DNA of 64,000 bases from positions 35,216,001 through 35,280,000 of the forward strand of contig JAGIQG010000013.1 of NCBI GenBank assembly GCA_024679065.1, read 5' to 3'. Positions within the stretch are counted from its first letter, which is position 1. Each line of letters starts with the position of its first letter. Shown one piece after another: positions 14,341 to 61,299 of the stretch. Below the pieces are notes generated by a model. That model was not told where the DNA came from. It worked only from the letters and a program-made list of their open reading frames with translations, and searched no databases. A program made the position numbers and the translations under genes. Source of the stretch: Sphyrna mokarran. Lineage: Eukaryota.

Positions 14341-15193
14341 GCAATCAGCATCTAACATTTTCTGAAGCTGGTATAATTTTTGCACATAGTAGTGAAAACT
14401 GCTATCCTCATGATTATTTTGACAGCAAAGTATGGACCTTTAAGACATGCTAGAAATATATTTTTTTAAATGATTAAATCAGGTCATCAGTAATGGGATG
14501 CACCAAGTGCAGGCCCAGTATAAGAAAATAAATATCCAAGGGGAAAATTAAAATTAGAAGCGTCAAGTTTTTAATTGAGATGATCTTTGTCGATTATGTG
14601 AACTGCTTCTAGGGATCCAGGTCAGTCAAATAGTGAAATCAATGTGACAATTAATGTTGCTCAGTTTTTACACAGAACTGATAAATCCTAATGCGGTCCT
14701 TCCAAGCTGCATTAAATGAATCCATTCTTTTATCCACACAACACTGCCTTTTCTCTTAAACTTTTATTAACTTGGAGCAGGTAGTCCAAATAGGGCTACC
14801 CATCAGTTGCAGAACTGATCTGCAATAAAATACTAGAATTAGTAGAAATGTGTTTGATTTCCCAGCGGTGAACTGCTCAGAATTCCTGCATTCCAATGTA
14901 ATAATCCTATAGTAGCTCGGGTCAGGTGTGCATCTATTTATCCATCAATCTCCATCCCTGATAAGATGTTTAGTGTATGATTATCTGCTGACTTCCCCTG
15001 CACTTGCTTGCTAGCCAACTTCTAGCAGAAAAAAACGCAACAATCCAGTGGCAACAGGAAATTGAAGTAACATTAAATACTTAAAAGCTCTGACTGGAAA
15101 TATTAGCTTAGTTAAATTAATCATTTAGATTTAAAAGTTTATATCGCAACTGAAAGTTTAGCAGAAGACAAGCCATATGGCCGTCTGAAAGAA

Positions 15194-15569
15194 GATACGA
15201 GATGCTGGCATTGGACTGGGGTAAACACAGTAAAAAGTCTCACAACACCAGGTTAAAGTCCAACTGGCTTATTTGGCAGCACTATCTTTCAGAATCTCAA
15301 GCTCCTTCATTATGTGAGTGAGGACTTGTGTTCACAAACAGGGCATATAAAGACACAAACTCAATTTATAAGATATCTTCTTGTAACTCTTGACTCGCCT
15401 GTAACTCACCTCTTGACTCTGCTAGAACCTGTAAACTCTTGCGTTTCAACCATTATCTTGTAAATTGAGTTTGTGAACACAAGTCCTCACTCACTTGATG
15501 AAGGAGCTTGAGACTCCGAAAGCTAGTGCTGTCAAATAAACCTGCTGGACTTTAACCTGGTGTTGTGAG
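15194..15569. mobile_element. Penelope-derived non-autonomous insertion with long inverted arms
   Basis: 15239-15375 is the reverse complement of 15454-15569 apart from a ~22-nt gap; each arm holds a hammerhead-like motif. Confidence 0.85.
15492..15528 (+). ncRNA. Minimal hammerhead ribozyme motif (C3>T variant)
   Basis: CAC-TTGATGA-A-GGAG(cttgaga)CTCC-GAAA-GC-TA-GTG: stem I CAC/GTG, stem II GGAG/CTCC, palindromic AGCT in place of stem III. Confidence 0.7.
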
Positions 15570-15950
15570 GCATCTGTAAGAATGCCAGACCCTGCAGAAC
15601 TGAAACTCTAATATTGGTCATTAAATCAGACTAGGAGGAAGCACGTCCTGAGATTAGTCAGAAGTTAAGAGCACAACAGTGCCTCGGTTCATCCCCCACA
15701 TTGTCCCCCTACCCCACCTCCCTCCCCAGCCCACCATGGAAGATCAATTAATAATCTACAGATTTATCTTATTCCTTCTCTAGAATTCAGTTTTGGTCTT
15801 TGGGAAACAGCTGGAAATGAAACAAATGATCACAAAAGTGCTGTAGATGCTGAACATCTGAAATGAAAATGTCCTTGACAAATACTAGACCTGCTGAGTT
15901 TACCCAGTATTTTCTGTTTTTACTATCTATGTATGACCACTCTGATGGTT

Positions 15951-16114
15951 AGAACTCAGTAAGAATTTAGCAACACCAAGGCATTTGCCTGACAAAGACA
16001 CAGTGTCGAAAGCTTGCAATTTTACTATCAAATAAATCGGTTGGATTTAAAATTCGTGTTGCTAAATTCTTACTGAGTTCTTACTACCCCAGTCCAACGC
16101 CGGCATCTCGACAT
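15951..16114 (+). mobile_element. 164-bp Penelope-derived mini-element with 13-bp TSD
   Basis: TSD cactctgatggtt at 15938-15950 and 16115-16127; perfect 26-bp inverted repeat 15951-15976/16056-16081; tail ccccagtccaacgccggcatctcgacat. Confidence 0.9.
15985..16019 (+). ncRNA. Minimal hammerhead ribozyme motif (G8>A variant)
   Basis: TTGC-CTGACAA-A-GACA(cag)TGTC-GAAA-GC-TT-GCAA: stem I TTGC/GCAA, stem II GACA/TGTC, AAGCTT palindrome. Confidence 0.72.
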
Positions 16115-16859
16115 CACTCTGATGGTTGCCAAGGACTTTTCAACAATGCGAGACATTATGTATTGAATCTCAGTGGCCATCCCAATAGTGTTGCACATTG
16201 CTCCAGACATTCTCTGTCCAGTTTGTGCTTCAATTTCTAAACCCAAAGCTTTCCTCTTTCCAGGTTATTTCCACCCTGGTCTCTTTCCCACCAGTGTTTA
16301 TCTCCCTGCCCACTCTTTCACAGTCCACACTAAACTGACAGTGTCCTTCCTGTCTCATCAATAAAATACTGTTAACCTTGGAAAGAAAGGAAAATGATCA
16401 CATAAAAATAAGTAAATGTTTTATTTTAATATACATTTTTACAAAATTTAAGTTTGCATGTGAACCCCTATTTCTTCATAGGGATATATTAATGCCAGTT
16501 TCCAGCTGATGTTACTTTTAACAGTTTCCTCAATATTTATTTCACAAATCACAGTGCAAACTCCTTTCCAGATCTGTGTCCAGACCGTCCTGACTTTAAT
16601 GCTTCTTCCAAGATTCCTGGCACATGAATCCCAGCTTTTACTCTCTGAGGTCACAGCTTTCCCATTTGTCTCTCACTCACATGTTGTGTATCAATCTGTG
16701 GATGTACTAATACCAGTTGAGGGAATGACTCCGAGTACTAGAGCAACGGAAAGTCCACACAGTCTAGGGCAAAAATTCATTCTACCTTAAATGCAAGCTC
16801 TGCTATATATCACCTTACCCTCCATCCTGCCTCTTCTTAAAGCAAATATGCATGAGAGA

Positions 16860-19679: not shown

Positions 19680-20080
19680 TGGCAGCACTCTTGCCTTTTG
19701 TATCAGATGGTTGTGGGTTCAAGTCCACTCCTGAAGGTTAAACATGTAATCTAAGTTGACATTTCAGTTCAATTTGAGGGAGTGCTGGAGCCATCTTTTA
19801 GCTGAGATGTTAAACTGCGATCTATCTATCCTCTCAAGTGGATAGAATAGATTCCATGGCACCATTCATAAAGTAAGAAGTCTCACAAATTAAAGTCTAA
19901 CAGGTTTATTTGGTAGCAAAAGCCATTCACAGAGGAACAGGAGACTACTCCCAATGACCTAGTCAATATTTATCGCTCACCCTCTGCCCAAAATAGATAC
20001 TATGGTCGTTAACTTATTTCAGTCAGTAGGAACTTTTTATATGCAAATTAGCTTGTAATTTCCTAAATTACAACAGTTAT
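19680..20080 (+). mobile_element. Deu-domain SINE (SacSINE1/AmnSINE-like), decayed
   Basis: ggcagcactcttgcc...ggttgtgggttcaagtcc head, gagatgttaaac, aatatttatc, tgcaaattagct...attacaacagt; second copy at 30110-30480. Confidence 0.7.
19869..19922 (-). mobile_element. Penelope terminal-repeat micro-fragment inserted in the Deu-SINE
   Basis: gtaagaagtctcacaa...ttaaagtctaacaggtttatttggtagc, flanked by duplicated ccattca (19862-19868, 19923-19929). Confidence 0.7.
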
Positions 20081-20101
20081 GTCATCATGTCCTGTGTGTT
20101 T

Positions 20102-20163
20102 AGATATTAAACTGATAAGAACAGATACCACACTTGATTTTAGCCAAAAGGCCAAGAAGCAAA
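20102..20163 (-). pseudogene. 3'-truncated U2 snRNA retrocopy (U2 nt ~1-62)
   Basis: Minus strand tttgcttcttggccttttggctaaaatcaagtgtggtatctgttcttatcagtttaatatct vs U2 ATCGCTTCTCGGCCTTTTGGCTAAGATCAAGTGTAGTATCTGTTCTTATCAGTTTAATATCT. Confidence 0.93.
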
Positions 20164-23990: not shown

Positions 23991-26393
23991 ATGGGGTCTG
24001 TTTTCGTACAGAGTGTGCAGGAAGGTTTTTTGACTCAGTATGTAGATAGGCCAACTAGAGGTGAGGCTACATTGGATTTGGTGCTGGGCAATGAGCCAGA
24101 CCAGGTGTTAGGCTTGGAAGTTAGTGAACATTTTGGTGATAGTGACCACAATTCGGTTACGTTCACCTTAGTGATGGACAGGGATAGGCATGAAGCTGGG
24201 GGCTGTAGTTATAGCTGGGGGAAGGGTAATTATGAGGCCATCAGGAGAGAATTAGGGTGCGTAGATTGGACTAGGGAACTACAGGGACTGGGAACATCTG
24301 GAATGTGGTGCTTATTCAAGGAGCAGCTGCTGAGAGTCCTTGATAAGTATGTCCCTGTCAGGCAGGGAGGACATGGACGAGTAAGAGAGCCTTGGTGTAC
24401 GAAAAGAGTTGATTTGCTGGTTAAGAAGAAAAAGGAGGCTTATGTCAGGATGAGGCTTGAAGGCTCAGGTAGTGCAATGGATAGCTATAGATTAGCTAGG
24501 AAGGAGGTAAAAAGTGAATTGAGGAGAGCTAAGAGGGGACACGAGAAGATGTTGGCTGATAGGATTAAGGAGAATCCTAAAGCTTTCTTTCGATATGTTA
24601 AGAATAGAAGATTGGTTAGGGCAAGATTAGGGCCAGTCATAGACAGCAGTGGGAAGTTGTGCGTGGAGCCTGAAGAGATTGGTGAGGCACTGAATAAATA
24701 TTTCTCTTCGGTATTCACGCAGAGTGCTGGAAATGTAGCTGTGGAGAGCACTGAGGTACAGGGTTGCAAATTGGGAAGTATTGTAGTAGATAGGGAGGAT
24801 GTGTTAGAAATTCTCGAGGGTTTGAAGTTGGATAAGTCCCCTGGGCCGGACGGGATTTACCCTAGGATTCTCTGGGAGGCAAGAGAGGAGATTGCAGAGC
24901 CTCTGGCTCTGATCTTCAGGTCCTCGTTGGTTACGGGTGTGGTTCCGGAGGACTGGAGGATGGCGAATGTGGTCCCATTGTTTAAGAAGGGGAAGAGAGA
25001 CCTTCCTGGGAATTATAGGCCAGTGAGTCTTACTTCTGTGGTGGGCAAGGTATTGGAGAGAATTATTAGGGATAGGATTTATAGTTATTTAGAGAGAAAT
25101 GAATTGATTGGGGATAGTCAGCATGGTTTCGTGAAGGGTAGGTCATGCCTTACTAACCTCATTGAGTTTTTTGAGAAAGTGACCAGAGAGGTGGATGGGG
25201 GTAAGGCGGTTGATGTAGTATATATGGACTTTAGTAAGGCTTTTGATAAGGTGGCCCATGGAAGACTTCTACAGAAAATGCAGATGTGTGGAATAGAGGG
25301 TGATTTAGCTAATTGGATTAGAAATTGGCTGGCAGATAGAAGACAGAGGGTGGTGGTTGATGGGAGATATTCATCGTGGAGTTCGGTGACGAGTGGTGTG
25401 CCTCAGGGGTCTGTTTTGGGGCCCCTGCTGTTTGTAATTTTTATAAATGATCTGGATGAGGGTATTGAGGGATGGATCAGTAAATTTGCAGATGATACTA
25501 AAGTTGGTGGTGTGGTAGATAGTGAAGAGGGGTGTTTTAGTTTACAGAGTGACTTGGACAAGTTGCAGAGCTGGGCCGAGAGGTGGCAAATGGAGTTTAA
25601 TGTGGAAAAGTGTGAGGTAATGCACTTTGGCAGGAACAATAAATGTGTAGAGTATAGGGCTAATGGTAGGGCTCTTAATAGTGTTGAGGAACAGAAGGAT
25701 CTTGGTGTATGTGTCAATAGATCCCTGAAAGTAGGCAGTCAAGTGGATAAAGTTGTTAAGAAGGCTTATGGAGTCTTAGCTTTTATTGGTAGGGGGATTG
25801 AATTTAGGAGCCGCAGCATCATGTTGCAGCTGTACAAAACTCTAGTGCGGCCGCACTTGGAGTATTGTGTGCAGTTCTGGTCGCCACATTATAAGAAAGA
25901 TGTGGAGGCATTGGAGAGGGTACAGAGGAGGTTTACCAGGATGTTGCCTGGTATGGAGGGCAGGTCCTATGAAGAGAGGTTGAAGGATTTGAGGTTGTTT
26001 TCGTTAGAAAGGAGGCGGCTAAGGGGGGATCTTATTGAAGCATATAAGATAATTAGAGGTTTGGATAGGGTGGACAGTGATAGCCTTTTTCCTAGGATGG
26101 AGAAAGCTAGCACGAGGGGACACAACTTTAAATTAAGGGGTATGAGTTATAGGACGGATATCAGAGGTAGGTTCTTTACTCAAAGAGTGATTAGGGAGTG
26201 GAATGCCCTGCCTGCAGCTGTTGTAGATGCGCCAAGTTTGGTGGCGTTTAAGAGGTTAGTTGATAAGTATATGGATGAGAAGGGAATGGTTTAGTTAGGA
26301 GGGGCATTGCTTTTTATTTTGGTCGGCACAACATCGAAGGCCAAAGGGCCTGTTCTGTGCTGTATTGTTCTATGTTTCTATGTTTCTATGTTT
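23991..26393 (+). mobile_element. Young 5'-truncated CR1 LINE with uninterrupted 767-codon ORF2 segment
   Basis: End of APE endonuclease (TLDLVLGN...SDHN) and complete RT ([42 protein letters not shown]); ORF 23991-26294; (ttctatgt)n tail. Confidence 0.98.
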
Positions 26394-26862: not shown

Positions 26863-27407
26863 GGGACATGGTGAGGGCTTGAGGCAGTGATGGGGATGGT
26901 GAGGGCTTGAGGCAGTGATGGACATGGTGAGGGCTTGAGGCAGTGATGGACATGGTGAGGGCTTGAGGCAGTGATGGACATGGTGAGGGCTTGAGGCAGT
27001 GATGGACATGGTGAGGGCTTGAGGCAGTGATGGACATGGTGAGGGCTTGAGGCAGTGATGGACTGGTGAGGGCTTGAGGCAGTGATGGACATGGTGAGGG
27101 CTTGAGCAGTGATGGACATGGTAGGGCTTGAGCGTGAGACAGGAGGGCTTGAGGCAGTGATGGACATGGTGGGGCTTGAGGCAGTGATGGACATGGTGAG
27201 GGCTTGAGGCAGTGATGGACATGGTGAGGGCTTGAGCTGATGGACTGGAGGGCTTGAGGCAGTGATGGACATGGTGAGGGCTTGAGGCAGTGATGGACAT
27301 GGTGAGGGCTTGAGGCAGTGATGGACATGGTGAGGGCTTGAGGCAGTGATGGACATGGTGAGGGCTTGAGGCAGTGATGGACATGGTGAGGGCTTGAGGC
27401 AGTGATG
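26863..27407. repeat. 28-bp minisatellite (GGACATGGTGAGGGCTTGAGGCAGTGAT)n, ~20 units
   Basis: Period 28 read directly; a degenerate continuation (gagacagtgatggg) runs to ~27640. Confidence 0.97.
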
Positions 27408-28729
27408 GGGGATAGGGGGTTTGAGACAGTGATGGGAGAGGGGATGGTGGGGATTGAGGGGATGGTGGATATTGAGGTAGTGAAGGGGGATAGGAAGTTT
27501 GAGACAGCCATATGATGGGAGTTTGAGACAGTGAAGAGGATGGGGGTGAGTTAAGGAATGGTGGGGATTTGAGACAGTGATGGGAATGGTGGGGATTTGA
27601 GACAGTGATGGGAAGGGGGATATGGATTTGAGATAGTGGCTGAAATAGGGCTGGTTCTTATTGGAGATTGGTTGTGGCCAATGCTTTGTTACAGATCTGG
27701 GAGAAGCACTCTTGTACCTTCTAGTTCCAAGCTGTCACCATTTTTTTTTTAGAAGTGCACTTTTTGGCTGCGATTGTAAATTGGTTCCTTTAAAGACCTA
27801 CTGATTGCCAGAATGGAGACCTGGTTTTCCTAAATACAGTTAGCCCAGCAGCAGCTGTGTTCAAGGCAACTAATCTGTTAAAAGTTTACCAAATAGGCAT
27901 CTTGCTGCTCAGTTACATGCACTAAGGGTAAACATCAGCTTCTGGTAATAGAAACCAGATAAATTTTTTTATATATCAGTAACAATTGCCTGCTTTAGAG
28001 GATGCTTTGGTGTCAACTTTACATCTCTAACTGCTGCCATTTTATCAGATTTCTGAACCCATCAATGTATTGGAAACTGATGTCTCTCATCTCCTTTCTT
28101 CTCTGCAGTATATTTCTAATATGCTGAGCTTGTGCATTACTTTGGAGGAGAATGTCTTCAGATCAAAATAAGACCCATTTAGCATCATGAATAAACATGC
28201 GTTATTTAAAAGATGATTTGCAAATATTTGAGGCATGCCTCAGAATATCTAACGAAAATGATTGAAGATCTGAAAGTTGAAAGACAAATCCACCATTCCA
28301 AGTGATTCTGGAGAGTGACTGAGGGAAGAACACTCATTGCTACTACAGCACAGTGATTCTAATTAGTGCTGTGAAAGAACAGCCAGAACATTAATGGCCA
28401 TCGGCTCCATTCAATCCCACTTGCAAGAAATGAGTTTTGGCACAAAGATGACTCAAGGACCTCGAGGGACAGCTATGTTTGACGCTGAAGTAGATGATGG
28501 AAATAGGAATGAACGGAAAGAGAGAGATGAAATCTAAGCTATAGAGTGTAGGGAAAGACAGAGAGTCTAACCAACCCATAAAAATTAAGGTTTGATCTTC
28601 TTTTTAAAGAATCTTTTTTACAGCAGTAAAGGAAAGATAACTGGATGGTATTTACTGATGCAGTGCAAATGAACCAATGTCATCTGTGCGAAGTAGTAAT
28701 CTTCTGAAACAAATTGTTTTTTTATGAAG

Positions 28730-30480: not shown

Positions 30481-30772
30481 TATGTAGTCTTTGTGTCCGT
30501 GTGCTACAGAAGGGAAAATAACAGAAGTTTTTTTGCCTATTGTTATCTAAATTATGCTGCGAGTATGTATGTATAGAGGAAGATAAGGTTATGAAAGTAA
30601 ACATGCAGGAAACATGAAACTGGCTATAAAAGTTTTTTTGGATGTGTAAGGAGAAAAAAATTGACAAAAATGAAAGTAAACCCTTTACAGTCAGAAAAGG
30701 AGAAATTCATAACAGGGATCAAAAAAATGGCTGATGAGCTAAATTCATACTTTCCTTCTGTCTTCACAAAGG

Positions 30773-31052
30773 GATGATGTGGAGATGCTGGTGTTAGACT
30801 GGGGTAAGCACAATAAGAAGTCTCACAACACCAGGTTAAAGTCCACTCACATTGTCTGTACCTTTAAAACTTGATTACCTGTAAAGACTCGCATTCTAAC
30901 CATTATTTTGTAAATTGAGTTTGTGTCTTTATATGCCCTGTTTGTGAACAGAACTCTCACTTACCTAATAAAGGGGCAGCACTCCAAATGTTTGTGGCTT
31001 GTGCTATCAAATAAATCTGCTGCACTTTCATCTGGTGTTGTGAGACTTCTTA
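30773..31052. mobile_element. Penelope-derived mini-element with 11-bp TSD
   Basis: TSD cttcacaaagg at 30762-30772 and 31053-31063; inverted 5' arm (30773-30845) plus terminal repeat with a decayed hammerhead (~30959-30997). Confidence 0.9.
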
Positions 31053-32004
31053 CTTCACAAAGGAAGACATGAATAATGTAACAGAAGTTTTAAGAAACAT
31101 AAGTTTTAGCGAGGAACTGAAGGAAATCAATATTAGTAGAGAAATTATTTTGGAGTAATTAATGGGATTGAAAGCAGATGAATCTCTAGGGCCTGATCAT
31201 TTTCATCCCAGAGGACTTAAGAAAATGGCCCATTTTCCAAAATTCTTTGGATTGTGAATGGTTCCTACAGATTTAGGTAGCTCAGCCGTGATTCAAAAAG
31301 GGAGGTAGAGAGAAATATAGACCAGTTAACCTAATGTCAGTACTGGGGAAGTTGCTAGAATCCATTTTCCAGAATTTCATAGCTCAGCATTTGGAAAGCA
31401 GTGGCATAATCAGACAAAGTCAGCATGGATTTACAAAAGGGAAATCATGCTTGACACATCTACCAGAATTCTTTGAGGATGTAACTAGTATTGTTGGCCA
31501 GGGAGAACCGGTTTATTTAAACTTTGAGAAGGCTTTTAACAAGGTCTTACATAACAAATTACCATGTAAATTAGAGCACCTGGGATTGCAGGTAGTGTCT
31601 TGAAATGGATAGAAAGCCAGTTAACAGATAGGAAGCAAAGAGTTCATACAAATGGGTATTTTTCCAATTGGCAGGCAATGATTAATGGAGTATTGCAGGA
31701 ACATATGCCAGGGCCCCAAATGTTCACATTACATATACTGAAGATTTGGATGAGGAAACTAAATGTATTATCTCATAATTTGCAGATGATACAAAGTTGG
31801 GTAGGAACTAAGTTGCGAGAAGGATGCAGAGATGCTTCAGCATTTGGACAGGCTGAGTAAGTGGACATATGAATGGCAGATGCAGTATAATGTGGATAAA
31901 TCTGAGGTTACCCACTTCAGAGCAGAGAATAGGAAGGCAGATTATTACTTGATTGAGTTTAAATTGAGAGAGGTGAATACTCAGCAAGACCTTGTATCCT
32001 TGTA

Positions 32005-33790: not shown

Positions 33791-34683
33791 ACAATGGTGG
33801 GGCGTCCAGAACTAGAGGTCACAGGACTGAGATGAGAAGAAATTTCTTCACTCAAAGAGTGGTGAATTTGTGAAATTCGCTATAACAGAAAGTAGTTGAG
33901 GCTAAAACATCTGAGTTCATTTCGGAATTAGATATAGCTCTTGGGACTAAAGAAATCAAGGGATATTGGGGAGGGGAGGTGGTGATGGAGATCAGGCTAT
34001 TAAACCATGATCATGATGACGGCAGAGCAGGCTCAAATGGAAAAATGGCCTACTGCTGCTTCTATTTTCTATGTTTTTATGTATTCATTCCCATGTTGGG
34101 TAATCATGGGACTAGCCTTGGAATTCCATACAACTACCTGCAAAGGCTCACTGTCAAGATTCACACATGTTTAATGGTCAAGATACCATAGTGCAATCCA
34201 GCACCAGTCGAACTACTTCTGCAAGGAATGGACGCCTTCAAGATAGAGGAGGAGAAGGATCTGTCATTAGTAAATTATACATATTTAAAATGCAAATTGC
34301 CAACCAATGTGTCAGTTCAATAAATGTAGGTGAAAAGCAGCAAATTCAGACTGCTGAATTTCTTAAATTGAAAGATTAAAGCACTATGTTCCTCAGTAAT
34401 CACAAGGAGATTGCTGCTTAAAATTTAATAAGAATTCTTGCAACTCATAATAGTCTATCCAAATACTGTAAAGCAAAATATTCTGGGCTGTAAGCTAATA
34501 AGGCATTAAGTAAATTGCTTGGGAACTTAAGTAGCTTGTTTAACCACAAAGAATTGAAAAGGACGACTAAAGGATGAGATTCCAGATCGACAGACATATT
34601 GATGTATTGAACAAAGACATTTGTTCGGCTAACCAGGCTGACAGCTATATTTACTTGTATTGACCGGATGGGCCTTCACTTAC

Positions 34684-35085
34684 CGGGGGGTTTAACCTTT
34701 ACCTCCAGAATATTTGAAGATTTATTGGCTTTCTTCACCCATTGGTGCATTTGGTTTTGGTGCCACAATTCAGCGATGCATTGGTATTTCCCTGCCTCCA
34801 AGTCACTGGCTTTGGAGATGACCAGACGGACAATATTGGACATTGTCTTTATTATCATTGTTTTATTTGCGAAATCTATCGCTTTGTCCCCCCAAGATAT
34901 GGATGTGTCATGTGCAAAGGTGACAATGTCATAGTTGTTCCTCGATCCAGCTGGCTGGAATTTCCACTTTACAGCGACTGATACGCGGGAAGGATAGATG
35001 GGTCTGATGAAACACTGGAGCTCAAATGCATTGTCGTAGATCACGGATGGTGTTCGTGTTATTGCTGTAACACTGAAGCCTGTTT
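34684..35085 (-). CDS. IGSF3: IGSF3 coding exon (Ig domain 5)
   Basis: (E)TGFSVTAITRTPSVIYDNAFELQCFIRPIYP...WKFQPAG...ASDLEAGKYQCIAELW...SNILEVKVKPP; ttcacAG acceptor, GTAAGT donor; 402 nt. Confidence 0.95.
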
Positions 35086-35656
35086 CTGTGAAGTAACCCA
35101 AAAAAAAACTGTGTGTCAATTTAGATGATCTAAACAAAACTTCCCAAAAATTGTTACAACACAGAAGGTTTCCAGGATCTTTTCCTGCTCAACCTTCTCC
35201 TACCCACTCATACTGGGGTATTGTTTCAGAGATGTTGCCCATCCTGTAATATCTTAGCTGTATGACCAATCTTTGTATGTAAACTCAGCCATTAGATCTT
35301 ATTTGACCATGGGAATATCTTAGTTTAACCAAGTTAGATTTTGGATTATCAAATAATATACAATCTGTTGATTTGGTTACAATACCTGCATCTCCAGGAA
35401 TTCCACACCATCTTGGAAGTGCTCTGAAAGATTATATTTACATCTGTCCCACCAACAAACATCATTGCACCCCAACTCCCCCCCTTAACCTCATGGATGA
35501 TCGAGTCCAAGCACAAATCTACTCTAATCCCATTTCCAATACTTGGTCCTTAGCCTTTAGTTAGTCACGTAATAGCTATCAAGCATGGACTAGACCATAT
35601 TTGTACCAGGAAAACCTAAGGAGTGACATTGAATACCTCAACTTAGCAAACAATAT

Positions 35657-36648: not shown

Positions 36649-37030
36649 TGTACGTAAGTGAGCTAGCATTGTTCCCCTTATTACAGTATATCCCAACAGC
36701 CAGTTTCCACCAGTTGGAGATGCAGAGTTTCAGAAGATGCTTGCTGGTCTCTCCACAACTCAATCTGCTGGATCCAATCCAATGAGCTCCTCACATTGAA
36801 AACATCTTGCTACATTAGTTTTTTAACTGCCTGGTATCCTCCTCCCCATTACATACTTCATAAGTTGAGATTCCAGCATTACTACTTTGTTTCAACAATA
36901 CCGCAATGACCATAACATATCCAGTGTTAATCCAGTCTACAGAAAATGTTCCTTTTAGATAATAGGCGGGAAATAGACTGGATACGGGAACAATTTACAG
37001 TCCTCGGGCTTTTCTGATGCAAGTACTTAC

Positions 37031-37432
37031 CCAATGGTGTTACCGTCGCTACAATATGAGCAGACTTCTCTCCGATTCGTTGCCAATCTCCACCCACGTT
37101 CATGATCCATTCACCCACTGTACAACCGTATTCGCCATCGTCCAATATCGCTGAGTTATGAAGCTGCAGCACAAAAGAATCTGGCCGTGGTTTGGTCAGC
37201 CTGATATCTCCATTAGCGACACGCTTACGGTACAGTGTACCAATGACCTGAGTGCCATCCTGTTCCAAGCTGATAATATCAGTGACCTGTTTCTGTTTGT
37301 TGATCAACTGCCAAGTGACAGAAAGACGACTGTGGCTCCTGACGGCCGAACGAACCTCACAGTTGAACTGGAGCGAGTTGCCCTCCAAAACCTTGGTAGT
37401 GTTACTGGTAATTGTTGTACTCAGGCTACTTT
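37031..37432 (-). CDS. IGSF3: IGSF3 coding exon (Ig domain 4)
   Basis: (K)SSLSTTITSNTTKVLEGNSLQFNCEVR...DDGEYGCTVGEWIMNVGGDWQRIGEK; ttcctgcAG acceptor, GTAAGT donor; 402 nt, phase 1-1. Confidence 0.95.
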
Positions 37433-37929
37433 CTGCAGGAAATAAAATACATGTAGTGAAATTGGTAGTTCTGTGGAAAGACAATTATACCAGAGCCAAG
37501 GATCTATCCAGTTTTGGATGATAAGAATCATTATATTTTTTGTTTCATAAGAATTTGTAGCAATGCCAATGAGTAAACCTTTTACAGATAGCTCTTATGA
37601 ATGTTTTTGGATGAGATTTTAATTCTCTTTGAAACAGACAGTAGAAGTAATAGCATATATTATTTGATTAATGTTATTTTCATACTAACAGAAACCTAAT
37701 TATTTTTATTGCTATAAATCTAGGGTAAACTGCTTGGGATTAACATCAAATGTGGCAGAGGAAGGGAACAGAATGGTAGTTAACTGATTTGTTTTGTCTT
37801 TATCCACAGGTTATCTATGATTGACTCTAGATTGGTTGACCAGACGCCACAAGTAATATATCATAGTCCTACTGTGAGAAGAAACACTATTATTTAGTTG
37901 AACCACCAAAATAAAATTTCATTTTTTCA

Positions 37930-46117: not shown

Positions 46118-46180
46118 TTATTCTCTATAAATTAATTTAATAGCTATACTGGTTACTACCTTTGAGTGGTAACTACTTAC

Positions 46181-46588
46181 CAGTAGCTTTTATATTCACC
46201 ATGGTTTTGTCAGTGCGTTTGGTAGCTATGGTGTACCAAGACCTGTCCGGATCTTGGATCCATTCTCTAGCCTCACAATAGAACTCTCCTTGATCAGATG
46301 CTTGCAGTTGGTAGATGGTGAGCTTGAACGAGGTCACTCCAATCTTATCCAGTCGTATATCTCCTGATGTCTGTCTCTGCTTAAATGACTCTCCAGAACG
46401 TAGGATAAAATCTCGTGTTAGAGCGATGACCTTGAGATTCTGATCTCCCTTCTGTAGGTACCATGCGACAGCCACGTGCGTGTGCTGGAATGTTTGCTTG
46501 GATACTTCACAGACCAGTTCCAGGGAGTCACCTTCTACTTTATTCAGGGTCTGTGGTACCGATACTGCACTCAGCGTGTCTGGAATGA
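46181..46588 (-). CDS. IGSF3: IGSF3 coding exon (Ig domain 2)
   Basis: Translation VIPDTLSAVSVPQTLNKVEGDSLELVCEV...RLDKIGVTSFKLTIYQLQASDQGEFYCEAREWIQDPDRSWY matches IGSF3 Ig2 as recalled, including the EWI motif. Acceptor tttctcttccAG, donor G|GTAAGT; 408 nt, phase 1-1. Confidence 0.95.
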
Positions 46589-47042
46589 CTGGAAGAGAAA
46601 GAGACAAAAATGAACAATAGGGTGCACACATACTCAACATTAATTTTAAAAAATGAAGTTAGTGTCAGAGTACCTGAAAATTTGATTCCTAATAATTTGA
46701 GTATAAGGTTTGTTTAATTTCTCAGATGATCAATTTAATACACTTTGCAAGCCTGGGGAAGTAAAACCAGGAACTGCCTGTCTCATAACTCTGAAATATG
46801 CTGAATTCTAAAGCCCCTGGAGATTGGTTATAGGACACTGTTGATCCTCAGCATGGAAGTGCTCACAGATTAGTACTCTTCTTTACAGTTAAGGAATGTA
46901 ATAGCTGGGATATGAAAGTTGAGTGAGAAAAATACATTGAGTGAGAAACTAGAGAAGGAATGGAGGTTTGCATTATTCACTGTTTGGTGGGAAGTGGAGG
47001 CAGTGAAATTAGCCAATGGACTTTTTTAATAGTGGTATTAGA

Positions 47043-59215: not shown

Positions 59216-60290
59216 GTGAACTTTATTCACAACAAAACCACGTGGGCCTCATTGTTTTTTTTATTTCTTAATGTTGCTGAGAATGAGCAAGTTCCAACAC
59301 ATCTAGCTTTGGCAGCACTTCTGAGCACTAACCATCTAAACGTAGTGAAGGTTTACATCAAGAGAGCTAAAGAACTCCTGAGGGAGTGTAGAGGTATGCA
59401 GAACAAATGCAACTGAGCAGGAGACACTACTGATGAAACTAGAAAGACAACATTGACAGAAGGAAGGTCAGGTAGTAGTGTGTCTTGAGTGAAGAGATTT
59501 TGTGAGTCTAGCTGTTAAAAACACATTGTGCAAGTGGGTGGCTTTTGAATCAGCTGCAGTCAGGTTTTTTATTTCTAAAGTTTCAAACATTAATGCTGAC
59601 AGTCATAGTAAAGTCAGACGGGAACTGCAAGTGGAGTCCTCCCAACAGTACATACAAAACCACTCTGAAACTTTGCATGTACTGTTAGACCACATGGCTT
59701 TCGAAGGAGTAGTAACTCAGAGGAGCGCCAAGCCTTTCTACTCTAACAAAATGCAACTATCAGCAAAGGTCTGGCCCGTCTGGCACAGCTATTGACTGAA
59801 CAAACGCACAAAGCGCCAAGAGATCTATTTGCGTATTCTAAATGTAAACCAAAAGTCATCAGCCGAGACCCTCTATGCCTTTCAAGCTGCGGTCATTGGT
59901 TGACATGTTGGACAGTTAGAAATGGACATTTCCGTCCAGATCAGATTCAGTTTTAGGGCAGGAATTTGACTAACCATTCAGACAGCTCACTTCAAAATCC
60001 TCCTTGGTTTTGTGGCATTTTCATTCTGCAGTGGACAGGGACAGGATGAAATCAGTCCCACTGACCCTGGAACTAGATGCTGAGAGGATATAGAGGCAGG
60101 CAGATACAGAGGTGGGCTGGTTAGAAGGCCTGCCTCACTTCTCTGGGATTTGATCCCAGTTATTTTAGAAGTTTGTAGGCCCTCATACCCTCATCCAGTC
60201 CGCATGGATCTTCATACCTTTCATGCTAACTCAATACCAACTCACCCAATATTCACTATGTACAGTCCTCAGGAGCCTTGTGGAGACAAT

Positions 60291-60686
60291 GATATGGAGA
60301 TGCTGGCATTGTATTGGGATAGGCACAGTAAGTAGAATCGTAGAAACTGATAGCTAAGTTCTGCAGACATGAGGACGGCCTCAACCGGGATCTTGTCACA
60401 CTATCCGTAATCCCCACAACTGGCCTGGGCTGGCAAAATCTCACTAACTGTCCTGGCTTGAGACTATGCATTCCTCTTTAATTTATGCTTAACCCTCTTT
60501 CCACTTGCATTGTCTGCACCTGTAAAGACTTGATTAGAATTAAAACTCGCATTCCAACCGTTATCTTGTAATTGAGTTTGTGTTTGTATATGCACTGTTT
60601 GTGAAACAAATACTGCACTGACCCAATAAAGGAGCGGTGCTCCAAAAGCATGTGCTATCAAATAAACCTGTTGGACTTTAACCTGG
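60291..60686 (+). mobile_element. Penelope-like element 3' end with inverted 5' tail
   Basis: Encodes KLIAKFCRHEDGLNRDL (GIY-YIG C-terminal GLN motif), followed by the same terminal repeat as 15454-15569 and 30846-31052, with a decayed hammerhead ~60620-60655. Confidence 0.85.
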
Positions 60687-61299
60687 TATGGAGATTAAAA
60701 AAGTAAACTTCTAAAAATCTAATATTGCTCCCACTATGCAGACTTGGCTCCAATTCATGAAGTCTTGAAATCTCAAGTGGTTAATCTCTCATAAAAACAA
60801 ACTTCAGTTCAAAAGTCTTAGATGTTCTTTTAAGCTGTCAATTGAATTGAATTCAGTACATCCTGCTGAGATAATTTCAGATTTTGTCATTTGATAAGAT
60901 CATGGCTGATCTGATTTTGGCCTCAAACTTGCTTTCCTGTCTGCTCATTACAATCTTTGTCTCCCTTATTAGTCAATGATCTATTTAACTCAACCTTAAA
61001 AATATACAGTGATCTTGACTCCATTGTCTTCTGTGGAATTCCACCAGAATCTCGGAATAAAATGTTCTCTTCATCTCCATCTTAAAACGGGAGACCTGTT
61101 ACTTTTACATCGTGGCCACAACTTCCTGGCTATTCACACTGGCAGGATCTTCCAGTCCCACCATCGGTGCACCCCCGCTGTAGATTTCCCGACACTGAAG
61201 GGTGCATTCAACAGGAAACCCCGTTTACTGGTGAACCTATCAACTGCCAATACACTGAGAAGCTAGCTTCTCATTGGACAAAGAATAACCAGTGACTCA

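What the first reader, a model, noticed from the sequence alone, without database searches (positions are those of the whole stretch)
15938..16127. 164-bp self-contained ribozyme-bearing retro-insertion (retrozyme-like): TSD, inverted repeat, minimal hammerhead with covarying stems
Seen: a perfect 13-bp TSD (cactctgatggtt), a perfect 26-bp inverted repeat, a hammerhead-like core and a conserved ~30-nt tail. Compared with the copy at 15492, both helices change sequence but keep pairing (stem I TTGC/GCAA vs CAC/GTG; stem II GACA/TGTC vs GGAG/CTCC). The core (YTGAnRA-A...GAAA) and the palindromic AGCT are kept, which is covariation evidence for a real fold. Each copy has a single core transition (G8>A at a CpG; C3>T). 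Established: minimal type-I hammerheads lacking stem III occur in Penelope-like elements. Inference: a family of non-coding, ribozyme-bearing mini-retroelements mobilised by a PLE, with five insertions in this window (15194, 15951, 19869, 30773, 60291; four retain the hammerhead region). This is the best candidate for an under-described system here.
Basis: partly seen in the sequence, partly recalled or inferred. Interest (0 to 1): 0.8.

Follow-up and report, generated by a model that had tools for sequence, protein, structure and literature searches.

The report
Truncated Penelope-like insertion carrying hammerhead motif
The 164-base insert is a dead, shortened and partly flipped copy of a very abundant Penelope-type jumping element whose end carries a minimal hammerhead ribozyme motif, which is a known kind of element and so an ordinary case.

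Summary
The sequence observations hold. There is an exact 13-bp TSD, an exact 26-bp inverted repeat, a minimal type-I hammerhead (HHR) motif with one core change, a 33-nt tail, and four more family insertions in the window.

The motif has the sequence hallmarks published for Penelope-like element (PLE) minimal hammerheads. Across family contigs of three coded organisms, the majority letters restore the catalytic boxes.

The 164 bp is not a self-contained element. All four TSD-bounded insertions share the published PLE architecture: a 5'-truncated direct copy, a head-to-head inverted copy, and a tail on one side only (33 to about 53 nt). Their inner breakpoints all differ, and one arm runs 366 nt upstream. 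The focal 26-bp arm fits a snap-back at a 5-nt microhomology (AACAC).

It is not a retrozyme. It is not in tandem, it lacks a canonical HHR, and no circular RNA evidence could be obtained.

I could not link the family to an RT/GIY-YIG ORF. None lies in this window.

First readers of this scan noted the same kind of fold-back Penelope mini-elements on other pieces of this genome (unchecked).

Verdict: a real feature and a new member of a known kind. Interest is low.

The parts
15938..15950 (.). left copy of the 13-bp target site duplication
   Evidence: exact repeat of 16115-16127
15951..15976 (-). head-to-head inverted arm: exact reverse complement of 16056-16081. Its inner 5 nt (AACAC, 15972-15976) can equally be read as the start of the direct part
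   Evidence: (26 of 26); upstream letters of relatives
15972..16114 (+). direct, 5'-truncated copy of the 3' end of the parent element (143 nt including the tail)
   Evidence: about 75% identity to other window copies over 83 nt; alignment
15985..16019 (+). minimal type-I hammerhead motif. Helix I 15985-88/16016-19; box 15989-95 (A at position 8); extra A 15996; helix II 15997-16007; GAAA 16008-11; AGCT 16011-14; H17 16015. The predicted cut lies after 16015, 99 nt from the 3' end
16082..16114 (+). one-sided 33-nt tail, absent from the inverted arm; keeps 3 CpGs
16115..16127 (.). right copy of the TSD
15194..15375 (-). insertion 2, direct part with tail (182 nt); decayed HHR (ATAATGA ... GAAAGAT)
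   Evidence: majority letters restore the boxes
15385..15569 (+). insertion 2, inverted part, lacks the last 45 nt; HHR at 15495-15528 with T at C3. The arms are 101 nt at 91%. TSD-like TCTGAAAGAA 15184-15193 and TCTGTAAGAA 15573-15582
30773..30845 (-). insertion 3, direct part with tail (73 nt, no HHR)
30846..31052 (+). insertion 3, inverted part with decayed HHR, lacks about 40 nt of tail. 11-bp TSD CTTCACAAAGG at 30762-30772 and 31053-31063. The insertion splits a LINE ORF whose frame is continuous without it
60290..60331 (-). insertion 4, direct part, little more than the tail (42 nt)
60332..60691 (+). insertion 4, inverted part, the longest view of the parent (about 366 nt), decayed HHR. 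The outer end is uncertain within 60687-60697 and the TSD is unclear
19869..19935 (-). tail-less fragment that ends where inverted arms end (35 nt before the family 3' end). It starts inside the HHR 3' half

Best explanation
What it is. The 164-bp insert is one dead-on-arrival retro-insertion of the 3'-terminal, hammerhead-bearing region of a much longer and very abundant Penelope-like (PLE-type) element. It is not an element in its own right.

Shown here:
- It is bounded by a 13-bp TSD.
- It consists of a 143-nt direct 3' part ending in a conserved tail, preceded by a 26-nt head-to-head inverted copy of a stretch that ends 33 nt before the 3' end.
- Three other insertions in the window have the same plan with different breakpoints.

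Inferred mechanism:
- The element RNA was copied by target-primed reverse transcription from its 3' end.
- At about 143 nt the new cDNA end (...GTGTT) folded back on the complementary AACAC of its own strand and was extended for 21 more nt. It stopped 33 nt short of the target junction, which leaves the tail on one side only.
- In the other three insertions the inverted part reaches further upstream than the direct part. That needs a second priming event at the other nick, at a semi-fixed internal site 33 to about 53 nt from the RNA 3' end (twin-priming-like), rather than a simple fold-back.

The hammerhead. It belongs to the master element. Established knowledge places such minimal motifs in the flanking repeats of PLEs, where two copies can pair through the AGCU palindrome to cut the precursor RNA. 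In this truncated single copy, with A at position 8, it is most likely inert.

Open. Whether the parent is an autonomous RT/GIY-YIG element or a longer non-autonomous derivative was not settled here.
For: - TSD, arm and tail are exact.
- The plan is shared by 4 of 4 TSD-bounded insertions: a direct part with tail plus an inverted part lacking the last 33, about 40, 45 and about 53 nt.
- Arms within one insertion are 91-100% alike. Different insertions are 73-78% alike, so each pair of arms arose at insertion.
- Insertion 3 is a single event. The LINE frame reads through once the insert and one TSD copy are removed (compared with the intact ORF).
- Inner breakpoints differ in all four, and the parent is at least 366 nt long.
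- Junction microhomology AACAC: relatives in organisms B and C carry (G)AACAC 2-3 nt upstream of CATTT, as does the main subfamily.
- HHR features match the four listed in PMC4209133 (read). [quoted passage not shown] The G10.1-C11.1 pair is GC in 4 and GU in 1 of 5. The palindrome AGCT and compensated helices are present.
- Majority letters restore the boxes (X1 depth): 15311 T>C 83%, 15313 T>G 88%, 15495 T>C 90%, 15285 T>G 90%.
- The architecture (5' truncation, adjacent inverted truncated copy, 30-40-bp tail at one end, TSD, overlap at the inverted junction) is described as typical of PLEs in PMC8557442 and PMC3846280.
Against: - No RT or GIY-YIG ORF is joined to the family in this window. 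The two RT ORFs present are L2/CR1-like LINEs.
- The 45-aa frame at the upstream end of the longest arm gave no PLE match: 2 hits, both repetitive unrelated proteins, and 0 Pfam families.
- Rfam reports no hammerhead, either at gathering score or at E up to 10.
- All 5 window copies of the motif have at least one broken core base.
- The claim that the focal arm is private to this insertion rests on thin data: loose-end consensus of 3 contigs (X2) and 17 contigs (X4), plus 13 unaligned letters of one 101-nt contig.
- Unchecked notes of this scan speak of fold-back mini-elements with a 'fixed' breakpoint. If the inner junction is also shared, that would favour a replicating fold-back unit.
Confidence: 0.78

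Rival explanations
1. A separate family of short, non-coding, ribozyme-bearing fold-back mini-retroelements, with the 164-bp unit as the mobile entity, is mobilised in trans by a PLE, retrozyme-like.
For: - The insert is perfectly bounded, and its arms and TSD are exact.
- No coding sequence is attached to any copy in the window.
- The literature shows that pLTR sequences alone can be mobilised in trans (PMC3846280) and that retrozymes derive from PLE repeats (preprint 10.64898/2026.07.22.740005).
- Unchecked notes of this scan describe mini-elements with a fixed arm/tail junction.
Against: - No second copy with this arm or junction exists in the window.
- The four insertions differ in every inner breakpoint.
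- The parent is at least 366 nt.
- Relatives continue upstream where the arm begins.
- A 26/26 stem with no wobble looks like a copying product, not a conserved RNA stem.
- There is no tandem arrangement: 0 of 19 TRF rows touch a copy.
Confidence: 0.12
2. A non-autonomous but longer (at least 400 nt) PLE-derived element, made of pLTR sequence only, is the parent. The insert would then be a truncated copy of that element rather than of an autonomous PLE. This is a sub-case of the best explanation, kept apart because it changes what the 'family' is.
For: - The copy number is very high: 85,775 contigs laid from one DNA run.
- No ORF remnant was detectable in the 366-nt arm.
- Non-autonomous PLE derivatives sharing 3' ends are known (PMC8557442).
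Against: Heavy 5' truncation alone gives the same picture. A 45-aa decayed frame has little search power. Unchecked notes report GIY-YIG remnants next to the same hammerhead family elsewhere in this genome.
Confidence: 0.3
3. The family is an ordinary SINE or LINE 3'-tail repeat unrelated to PLEs, and the hammerhead likeness is chance.
For: Rfam finds no hammerhead. All window copies have broken cores. No PLE protein link was found.
Against: - 2 descriptor hits against 0.04 expected, both at the homologous place in the family.
- Majority letters restore both boxes and the palindrome.
- Helices are compensated.
- The extra nucleotide and the G10.1-C11.1 pair are as in PLE motifs.
- The inverted-copy-plus-one-sided-tail plan is described for PLEs, not for LINE/SINE insertions.
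- There is no poly(A) or microsatellite 3' end.
Confidence: 0.05
4. A MITE-like DNA transposon with 26-bp terminal inverted repeats and a TSD.
For: Exact inverted repeat and exact TSD.
Against: The 3' arm is not terminal, because 33 nt of tail lie between it and the TSD. Homologous copies have arms of quite different length and content.
Confidence: 0.01

Closest known systems
Minimal hammerhead ribozymes of Penelope-like elements (Cervera and De la Pena 2014, PMC4209133; text read)
   Same: - Type-I topology with short helices I and II.
- No real helix III, but a palindrome at 15.2-16.2 (AGCU).
[quoted passage not shown]
- Families within a genome that differ by compensated helix changes.
- Mostly single, widespread copies 'probably related to truncated PLEs', and pairs on opposite strands 100-700 bp apart.
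   Different: That paper names bony fishes, coelacanth, Xenopus and reptiles among vertebrates, not a cartilaginous fish. Here no copy was shown inside a full PLE, and no cleavage was tested.
Typical PLE insertion architecture (Pen2a_Av and others in Adineta vaga, PMC3846280; Naiad, Penelope and others in PMC8557442; passages seen)
   Same: TSD of about 8-13 bp, strong 5' truncation, an adjacent inverted truncated copy, an inverted copy shorter by a 30-40-bp 'tail' that is present at one end only, and overlap or palindrome at the inverted junction.
   Different: The present copies are miniature (164-407 bp) and hold no ORF and no direct pLTR pair. The tail offset ranges from 33 to about 53 nt.
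Metazoan non-LTR retrozymes (Cervera and de la Pena 2020, PMC7229834, passages; Li, Clavereau and Pollet 2026 preprint, abstract and Results part 1)
   Same: Non-coding, low-GC repeats with type-I hammerheads. They co-occur with PLEs and are proposed to derive from PLE repeats.
   Different: Retrozymes are head-to-tail tandem units of 150-450 bp with canonical hammerheads (loop-loop contacts), expressed as circular RNAs. Here there is no tandem, the motif is minimal, and there is no RNA evidence.
L1 twin-priming inversions
   Same: A 5'-inverted plus 3'-direct structure within one TSD, with microhomology at the inversion junction.
   Different: In L1 the two parts usually do not overlap. Here the two parts overlap by 26 to more than 130 nt, and the second start lies at a semi-fixed site near the 3' end.

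Membership tests
PLE minimal hammerhead (min-HHR) | Catalytic boxes CUGANGA and GAAA intact | tested here: inconclusive
   0 of 5 window copies are intact: focal CTGACAA, 15495 TTGATGA, and three with 2 or more changes. At family level the majority letters restore the boxes at 15311, 15313, 15495 and 15285, in 83-90% of X1 depth. For the focal subfamily the only evidence is a loose-end consensus of 17 contigs reading CTGACGA.
PLE minimal hammerhead (min-HHR) | [quoted passage not shown] | tested here: met
   An A is present in 5 of 5 aligned copies (column 16).
PLE minimal hammerhead (min-HHR) | G10.1-C11.1 pair closing helix II | tested here: met
   GC in 4 and GU in 1 of 5 copies (pair 17-31).
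PLE minimal hammerhead (min-HHR) | No stable helix III; palindromic 15.2-16.2 that would allow a dimer | tested here: met
   GAAAGCT is present in 2 of 5 copies and decayed in 3. The majority letter restores C at 15285 in 90% of X1 depth.
PLE minimal hammerhead (min-HHR) | Lies in the flanking repeat (pLTR) of an element with an RT plus GIY-YIG ORF | tested here: inconclusive
   There is no PLE ORF in the window. The 45-aa upstream frame gave no PLE hit. Unchecked notes claim the link elsewhere in the genome.
PLE minimal hammerhead (min-HHR) | Self-cleavage, as a dimer | not testable with these tools
   Cofolding gives extended self-duplexes and cannot speak to catalysis.
PLE-type insertion | TSD plus variable 5' truncation | tested here: met
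   TSDs are 13/13, 11/11 and 9/10; the fourth is unclear. Direct parts are 143, 182, 73 and 42 nt.
PLE-type insertion | Adjacent head-to-head inverted truncated copy | tested here: met
   Present in 4 of 4 TSD-bounded insertions.
PLE-type insertion | 30-40-bp tail present at one end only | tested here: met
   The inverted parts lack the last 33, about 40, 45 and about 53 nt.
Metazoan non-LTR retrozyme | Head-to-tail tandem units of 150-450 bp | tested here: not met
   0 of 19 tandem-repeat rows overlap any copy. Copies are single or inverted.
Metazoan non-LTR retrozyme | Canonical type-I hammerhead with loop-loop contacts | tested here: not met
   No Rfam hammerhead model matches at gathering score or at E up to 10 on 15100-16300. 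Helix I is 3-4 bp with no loop 1.
Metazoan non-LTR retrozyme | Circular RNA of unit length | not testable with these tools
   All four runs were contigs only, and one is only guessed to be RNA.
MITE / TIR transposon | Inverted repeats at both termini next to the TSD | tested here: not met
   33 nt separate the 3' arm from the TSD.

The most novel reading that the evidence does not exclude
The outer end of the inverted part lies at a semi-fixed site 33 to about 53 nt from the element's 3' end in all 5 events seen here. The focal TSD also partly matches the first 12 nt of the tail (7 of 12). If that site is a defined second-strand initiation point, where the other target nick primes on the element RNA, then the unexplained one-sided 'tail' and the head-to-head repeats of PLEs come from twin priming at a fixed internal site. 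This genome may hold on the order of 100,000 miniature copies in which both junctions lie within 400 bp. Those that are TSD-bounded would be a natural data set to work out the still undefined PLE integration cycle.
Probability: 0.3. Interest if true: 0.5.

Novelty: new member of a known kind. Interest (0 to 1): 0.2.

Why it matters
It mainly corrects an over-reading. The ribozyme-bearing 'mini-element' is a by-product of how Penelope-type elements insert, and the ribozyme class and the insertion plan are both in print.

Two things have modest value. First, the family is extremely abundant and is shared by at least three coded organisms. Second, each miniature copy records both junctions, the tail offset and the junction microhomology of one integration event. 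A genome-wide census of such copies could test models of the PLE integration cycle, which the literature still calls undefined (PMC8557442).

Tried and rejected
- Rfam. At gathering score and at E up to 10 on 15100-16300 there was no hammerhead. The only hits were weak hairpin-type matches caused by the 26-bp arms. This is expected for a motif without helix III.
- Exact-pattern scans for more copies. A 23-nt 3'-module word gave 0 hits in metagenome contigs and 0 in viral contigs. A degenerate 21-nt tail pattern gave 9 loci in metagenome contigs and 9 in genome contigs. In all 18 the match reaches only 15-30 nt. These are chance matches in bacterial DNA and were dropped.
- ORF remnant. The 45-aa frame at 60344-60478 gave 2 hits, both unrelated repetitive proteins, and no Pfam family. 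My recalled likeness to the end of GIY-YIG domains therefore stays untested.
- RNA cofolding of the two best motifs. Homodimers fold as extended duplexes, which says nothing about a hammerhead dimer.
- Depth step. Summed contig depth rises 20- to 50-fold near the predicted cut site: 44K to 2.15M at 15519/15520, and 222K to 5.0M at 16000/16001. I considered that most copies start at the cleavage site and rejected it for three reasons. The tool warns that contig depth cannot rank parts. In the window, 5 of 7 segments that hold the 3' module also hold the HHR region. None of 9 segment 5' ends lies at the cut site.
- An RNA dimer as an obligatory double template. I rejected this because strand displacement on one RNA suffices, and because PLE clades without canonical hammerheads show the same architecture (abstract of PMC8557442, seen).
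- MITE reading. Rejected on anatomy.
- Print search. 'Penelope' + 'shark' + 'hammerhead ribozyme' gave 1 paper, a review that uses 'shark' only for the shape of the motif. I found no description of this family in the searched library. Repeat databases could not be consulted.
Full report
**Observation.** The stretch is as described.
- CACTCTGATGGTT occurs exactly twice in the window, at 15938-15950 and 16115-16127. None of 100 shuffles gave 2 matches. The two copies enclose 164 bp.
- 15951-15976 is the exact reverse complement of 16056-16081, 26 of 26. The pairs just outside and just inside fail.
- Between the arms lies a hammerhead-like motif at 15985-16019. It has helix I TTGC/GCAA, the box CTGACAA, one extra A, helix II GACA-CAG-TGTC, GAAA, the palindrome AGCT, and T at position 17.
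- After the 3' arm come 33 nt of tail. The 21-nt core of the tail recurs at 15199-15219 and 30782-30802 on the other strand. None of 100 shuffles gave 3 matches.

**Is the motif more than chance?** I ran a descriptor modelled on the published minimal hammerhead. It requires helix I of at least 3 bp, CUGANGA, an optional extra nucleotide, helix II of at least 4 bp, GAAA, a palindromic 0-4-nt insert, U, H, and at most one core mismatch.
- It finds 2 motifs on both strands of the 64 kb: the focal one and 15495-15528. No further motif appears when two mismatches are allowed.
- Fifty dinucleotide shuffles gave a mean of 0.04, and 0 of 50 gave two or more.
- Both hits sit at the homologous place of one repeat family.
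- Rfam reports no hammerhead at gathering score or at E up to 10. That fits a motif that lacks helix III and loop contacts.

**The family in the window.** blastn finds five sites: 15194-15569, the focal insert, 19869-19935, 30773-31052 and 60290-60697. Read in the sense of the hammerhead, each of the four TSD-bounded insertions has the same plan. There is a direct 3' part ending in the tail, and in front of it, head to head, an inverted copy that lacks the tail.

| Insertion | Direct part | Inverted part | Tail missing from the inverted part |
|---|---|---|---|
| Focal (15951-16114) | 143 nt | 26 nt | 33 nt |
| 15194-15569 | 182 nt | about 185 nt | 45 nt |
| 30773-31052 | 73 nt | 207 nt | about 40 nt |
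| 60290-60697 | 42 nt | about 366 nt | about 53 nt |

- The lone fragment 19869-19935 ends 35 nt before the family 3' end.
- Arms within one insertion are 100% alike (26 nt), 91% (101 nt) and 91% (32 nt). Copies from different insertions are 73-78% alike. Each arm pair therefore arose with its insertion.
- TSDs are 13/13, 11/11 (CTTCACAAAGG) and 9/10 (TCTGAAAGAA against TCTGTAAGAA). The fourth is unclear.
- Insertion 30773-31052 splits a LINE ORF. The left flank ends ...LNSYFPSVFTK and the right flank begins FTKEDMNNV.... This parallels ...LNKYFSSVFTQ... in the intact LINE ORF at 23991-26294. The whole inverted pair is therefore one event.

**The 164 bp is not a unit.**
- No inner breakpoint is shared among the four insertions.
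- The longest arm shows that the parent runs at least 366 nt. Its upstream part is shared at about 77% by two other insertions.
- The inner 5 nt of the focal arm, AACAC, are also what the parent carries at that place. The main subfamily reads ...GTGAACACAAG... upstream of its hammerhead. Relatives of the focal subfamily in organisms B and C read (G)AACAC two to three letters before CATTT. That comes from loose-end consensus of 3 and 17 contigs.
- One 101-nt contig of organism B matches 15981-16068 with 5 differences, and its remaining 13 letters do not fit the arm.
- This evidence is thin, but it points to an arm private to this insertion, joined at a 5-nt microhomology.

**Family-level view.** Contigs of four coded runs were laid on 15150-16250 at 80% likeness or more.
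- The numbers laid were 85,775 (X1, DNA, organism A), 3,349 (X3, guessed RNA, organism A), 11,300 (X4, organism C) and 123 (X2, organism B, a run of under 1 million letters).
- The family is therefore very abundant and present in at least three coded organisms.
- Summed depth on the 3' module reaches 4.8-6.9 million, against 14-25 on single-copy bins. That suggests on the order of 100,000 copies. The tool warns that this is no copy number.
- The window's own count agrees in order of magnitude: 7 segments with the 3' module in 64 kb.
- Majority letters repair the decayed boxes of the window copies. The changes 15311 T>C (83% of X1 depth) and 15313 T>G (88%) turn ATAATGA into CTGATGA in sense. 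The change 15495 T>C (90% in X1 and X4, but only 18% in X3) turns TTGATGA into CTGATGA. The change 15285 T>G (90%) turns GAAAGAT into GAAAGCT.
- At position 17 of the focal copy, C is read in 55% of depth. Both letters are allowed there.
- For position 8 of the focal copy no row was shown, since 23 rows were hidden. Relatives in organism C read CTGACGA and those in organism B read CTGACAA. Whether A8 arose after insertion by CpG decay or was inherited is open.

**Compensated helices.** On an alignment of the five motif copies, 89.5% of cells pair, against 31-50% in registers slid by 1-3 columns. Three of 8 pairs change on both sides. Ten of 500 shuffles reach this. All three double changes separate the focal copy from the other four, so this is one contrast. 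It agrees with the 'consensus families full of covariations' described for these motifs (PMC4209133).

**Comparison with print.** PMC4209133 describes minimal type-I hammerheads in the flanking repeats of PLEs.
- They are widespread as single motifs 'probably related to truncated PLEs', sometimes as pairs 100-700 bp apart on opposite strands.
[quoted passage not shown] All four are met here.
- PMC3846280 and PMC8557442 describe the typical PLE insert: TSD, frequent 5' truncation, an adjacent inverted truncated copy, a 30-40-bp tail at one end only, an inverted repeat shorter by about that amount, and overlap or palindromes at the inverted junction.
- The window's four insertions are that plan in miniature.

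**Not a retrozyme.** Retrozymes as defined in PMC7229834 are tandem units of 150-450 bp with canonical hammerheads, expressed as circles. Here no copy is in tandem: 0 of 19 TRF rows touch a copy. The motif is minimal, and no RNA evidence could be had because all runs were contigs. A 2026 preprint already argues that animal retrozymes derive from PLE repeats.

**Mechanism.**
- Shown: the anatomy described above.
- Inferred for the focal insert: target-primed reverse transcription starts from the RNA 3' end. At about 143 nt the cDNA end (...GTGTT) anneals to AACAC of the same cDNA and is extended 21 nt. It stops 33 nt before the target junction. This gives exactly the observed order of letters.
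- Inferred for the other three: the inverted part reaches further upstream than the direct part, so fold-back on the first cDNA cannot explain them. A second priming at the other nick, at an internal site 33 to about 53 nt from the RNA 3' end, fits. It would need strand displacement or a second RNA molecule.
- The focal TSD matches the reverse complement of the first 12 nt of the tail at 7 of 12 positions. This is the 41-nt, 85% arm, and it hints at annealing there. One case proves nothing.
- The hammerhead would act in transcripts of the master element. In this single truncated copy it is most likely inert.

**What is missing.**
- No RT/GIY-YIG ORF is linked to the family here. The two RT ORFs of the window are L2/CR1-like LINEs.
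- The 45-aa frame at the far end of the longest arm gave no PLE hit.
- Scans of metagenome, viral and genome collections gave only chance matches.
- First-stage notes on other pieces of this genome report the same hammerhead family next to GIY-YIG remnants, and fold-back mini-elements with a one-sided tail. These are unchecked leads, and I did not count them as support.

**Verdict.** This is a new member of a known kind and of low interest. Its one useful angle is that these miniature copies could serve as a large natural record of PLE integration events.

Noticed in passing
window 19869-20163: A U2 snRNA pseudogene (20003-20163, minus strand, Rfam 61 bits) lies 67 nt upstream, on the same strand, of the tail-less family fragment 19869-19935. 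It could be a chimera made by template switching, like U6/L1 chimeras, or a mere neighbour.
   Followed up: no
window 23991-26294 and 26864-27408: An intact 767-aa L2/CR1-like LINE ORF with a reverse transcriptase domain sits in a strongly G-skewed stretch. It is followed by a 28-nt minisatellite of 20 copies.
   Followed up: partly
window 34676-35137, 36927-37484, 46173-46640 (minus strand): Three ORFs give immunoglobulin V-set or I-set matches. The best is 8.7e-12 at 46173-46640; the other two are weak and below Pfam's cut-offs. The window may lie in a cluster of V-type exons.
   Followed up: no
window 15887-15922: The left flank of the focal insert is itself part of another high-copy repeat. 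Summed depth is about 55,000 against 14-25 on single-copy bins, with loose ends at both edges.
   Followed up: no
window 15387-15428: Inside the inverted part of insertion 15194-15569 a 19-nt stretch is duplicated at 79% identity. The two arms also differ by a 21-nt deletion between two GTTTGTG words. Both look like slippage after or during insertion.
   Followed up: no
window 60290-60301 and 60684-60695: A 12-nt direct repeat (11 of 12) joins the end of the tail at one edge of insertion 60290-60697 with the other edge. Either the TSD resembles the tail or a short piece of tail was copied at both ends. The true boundary is unclear.
   Followed up: partly
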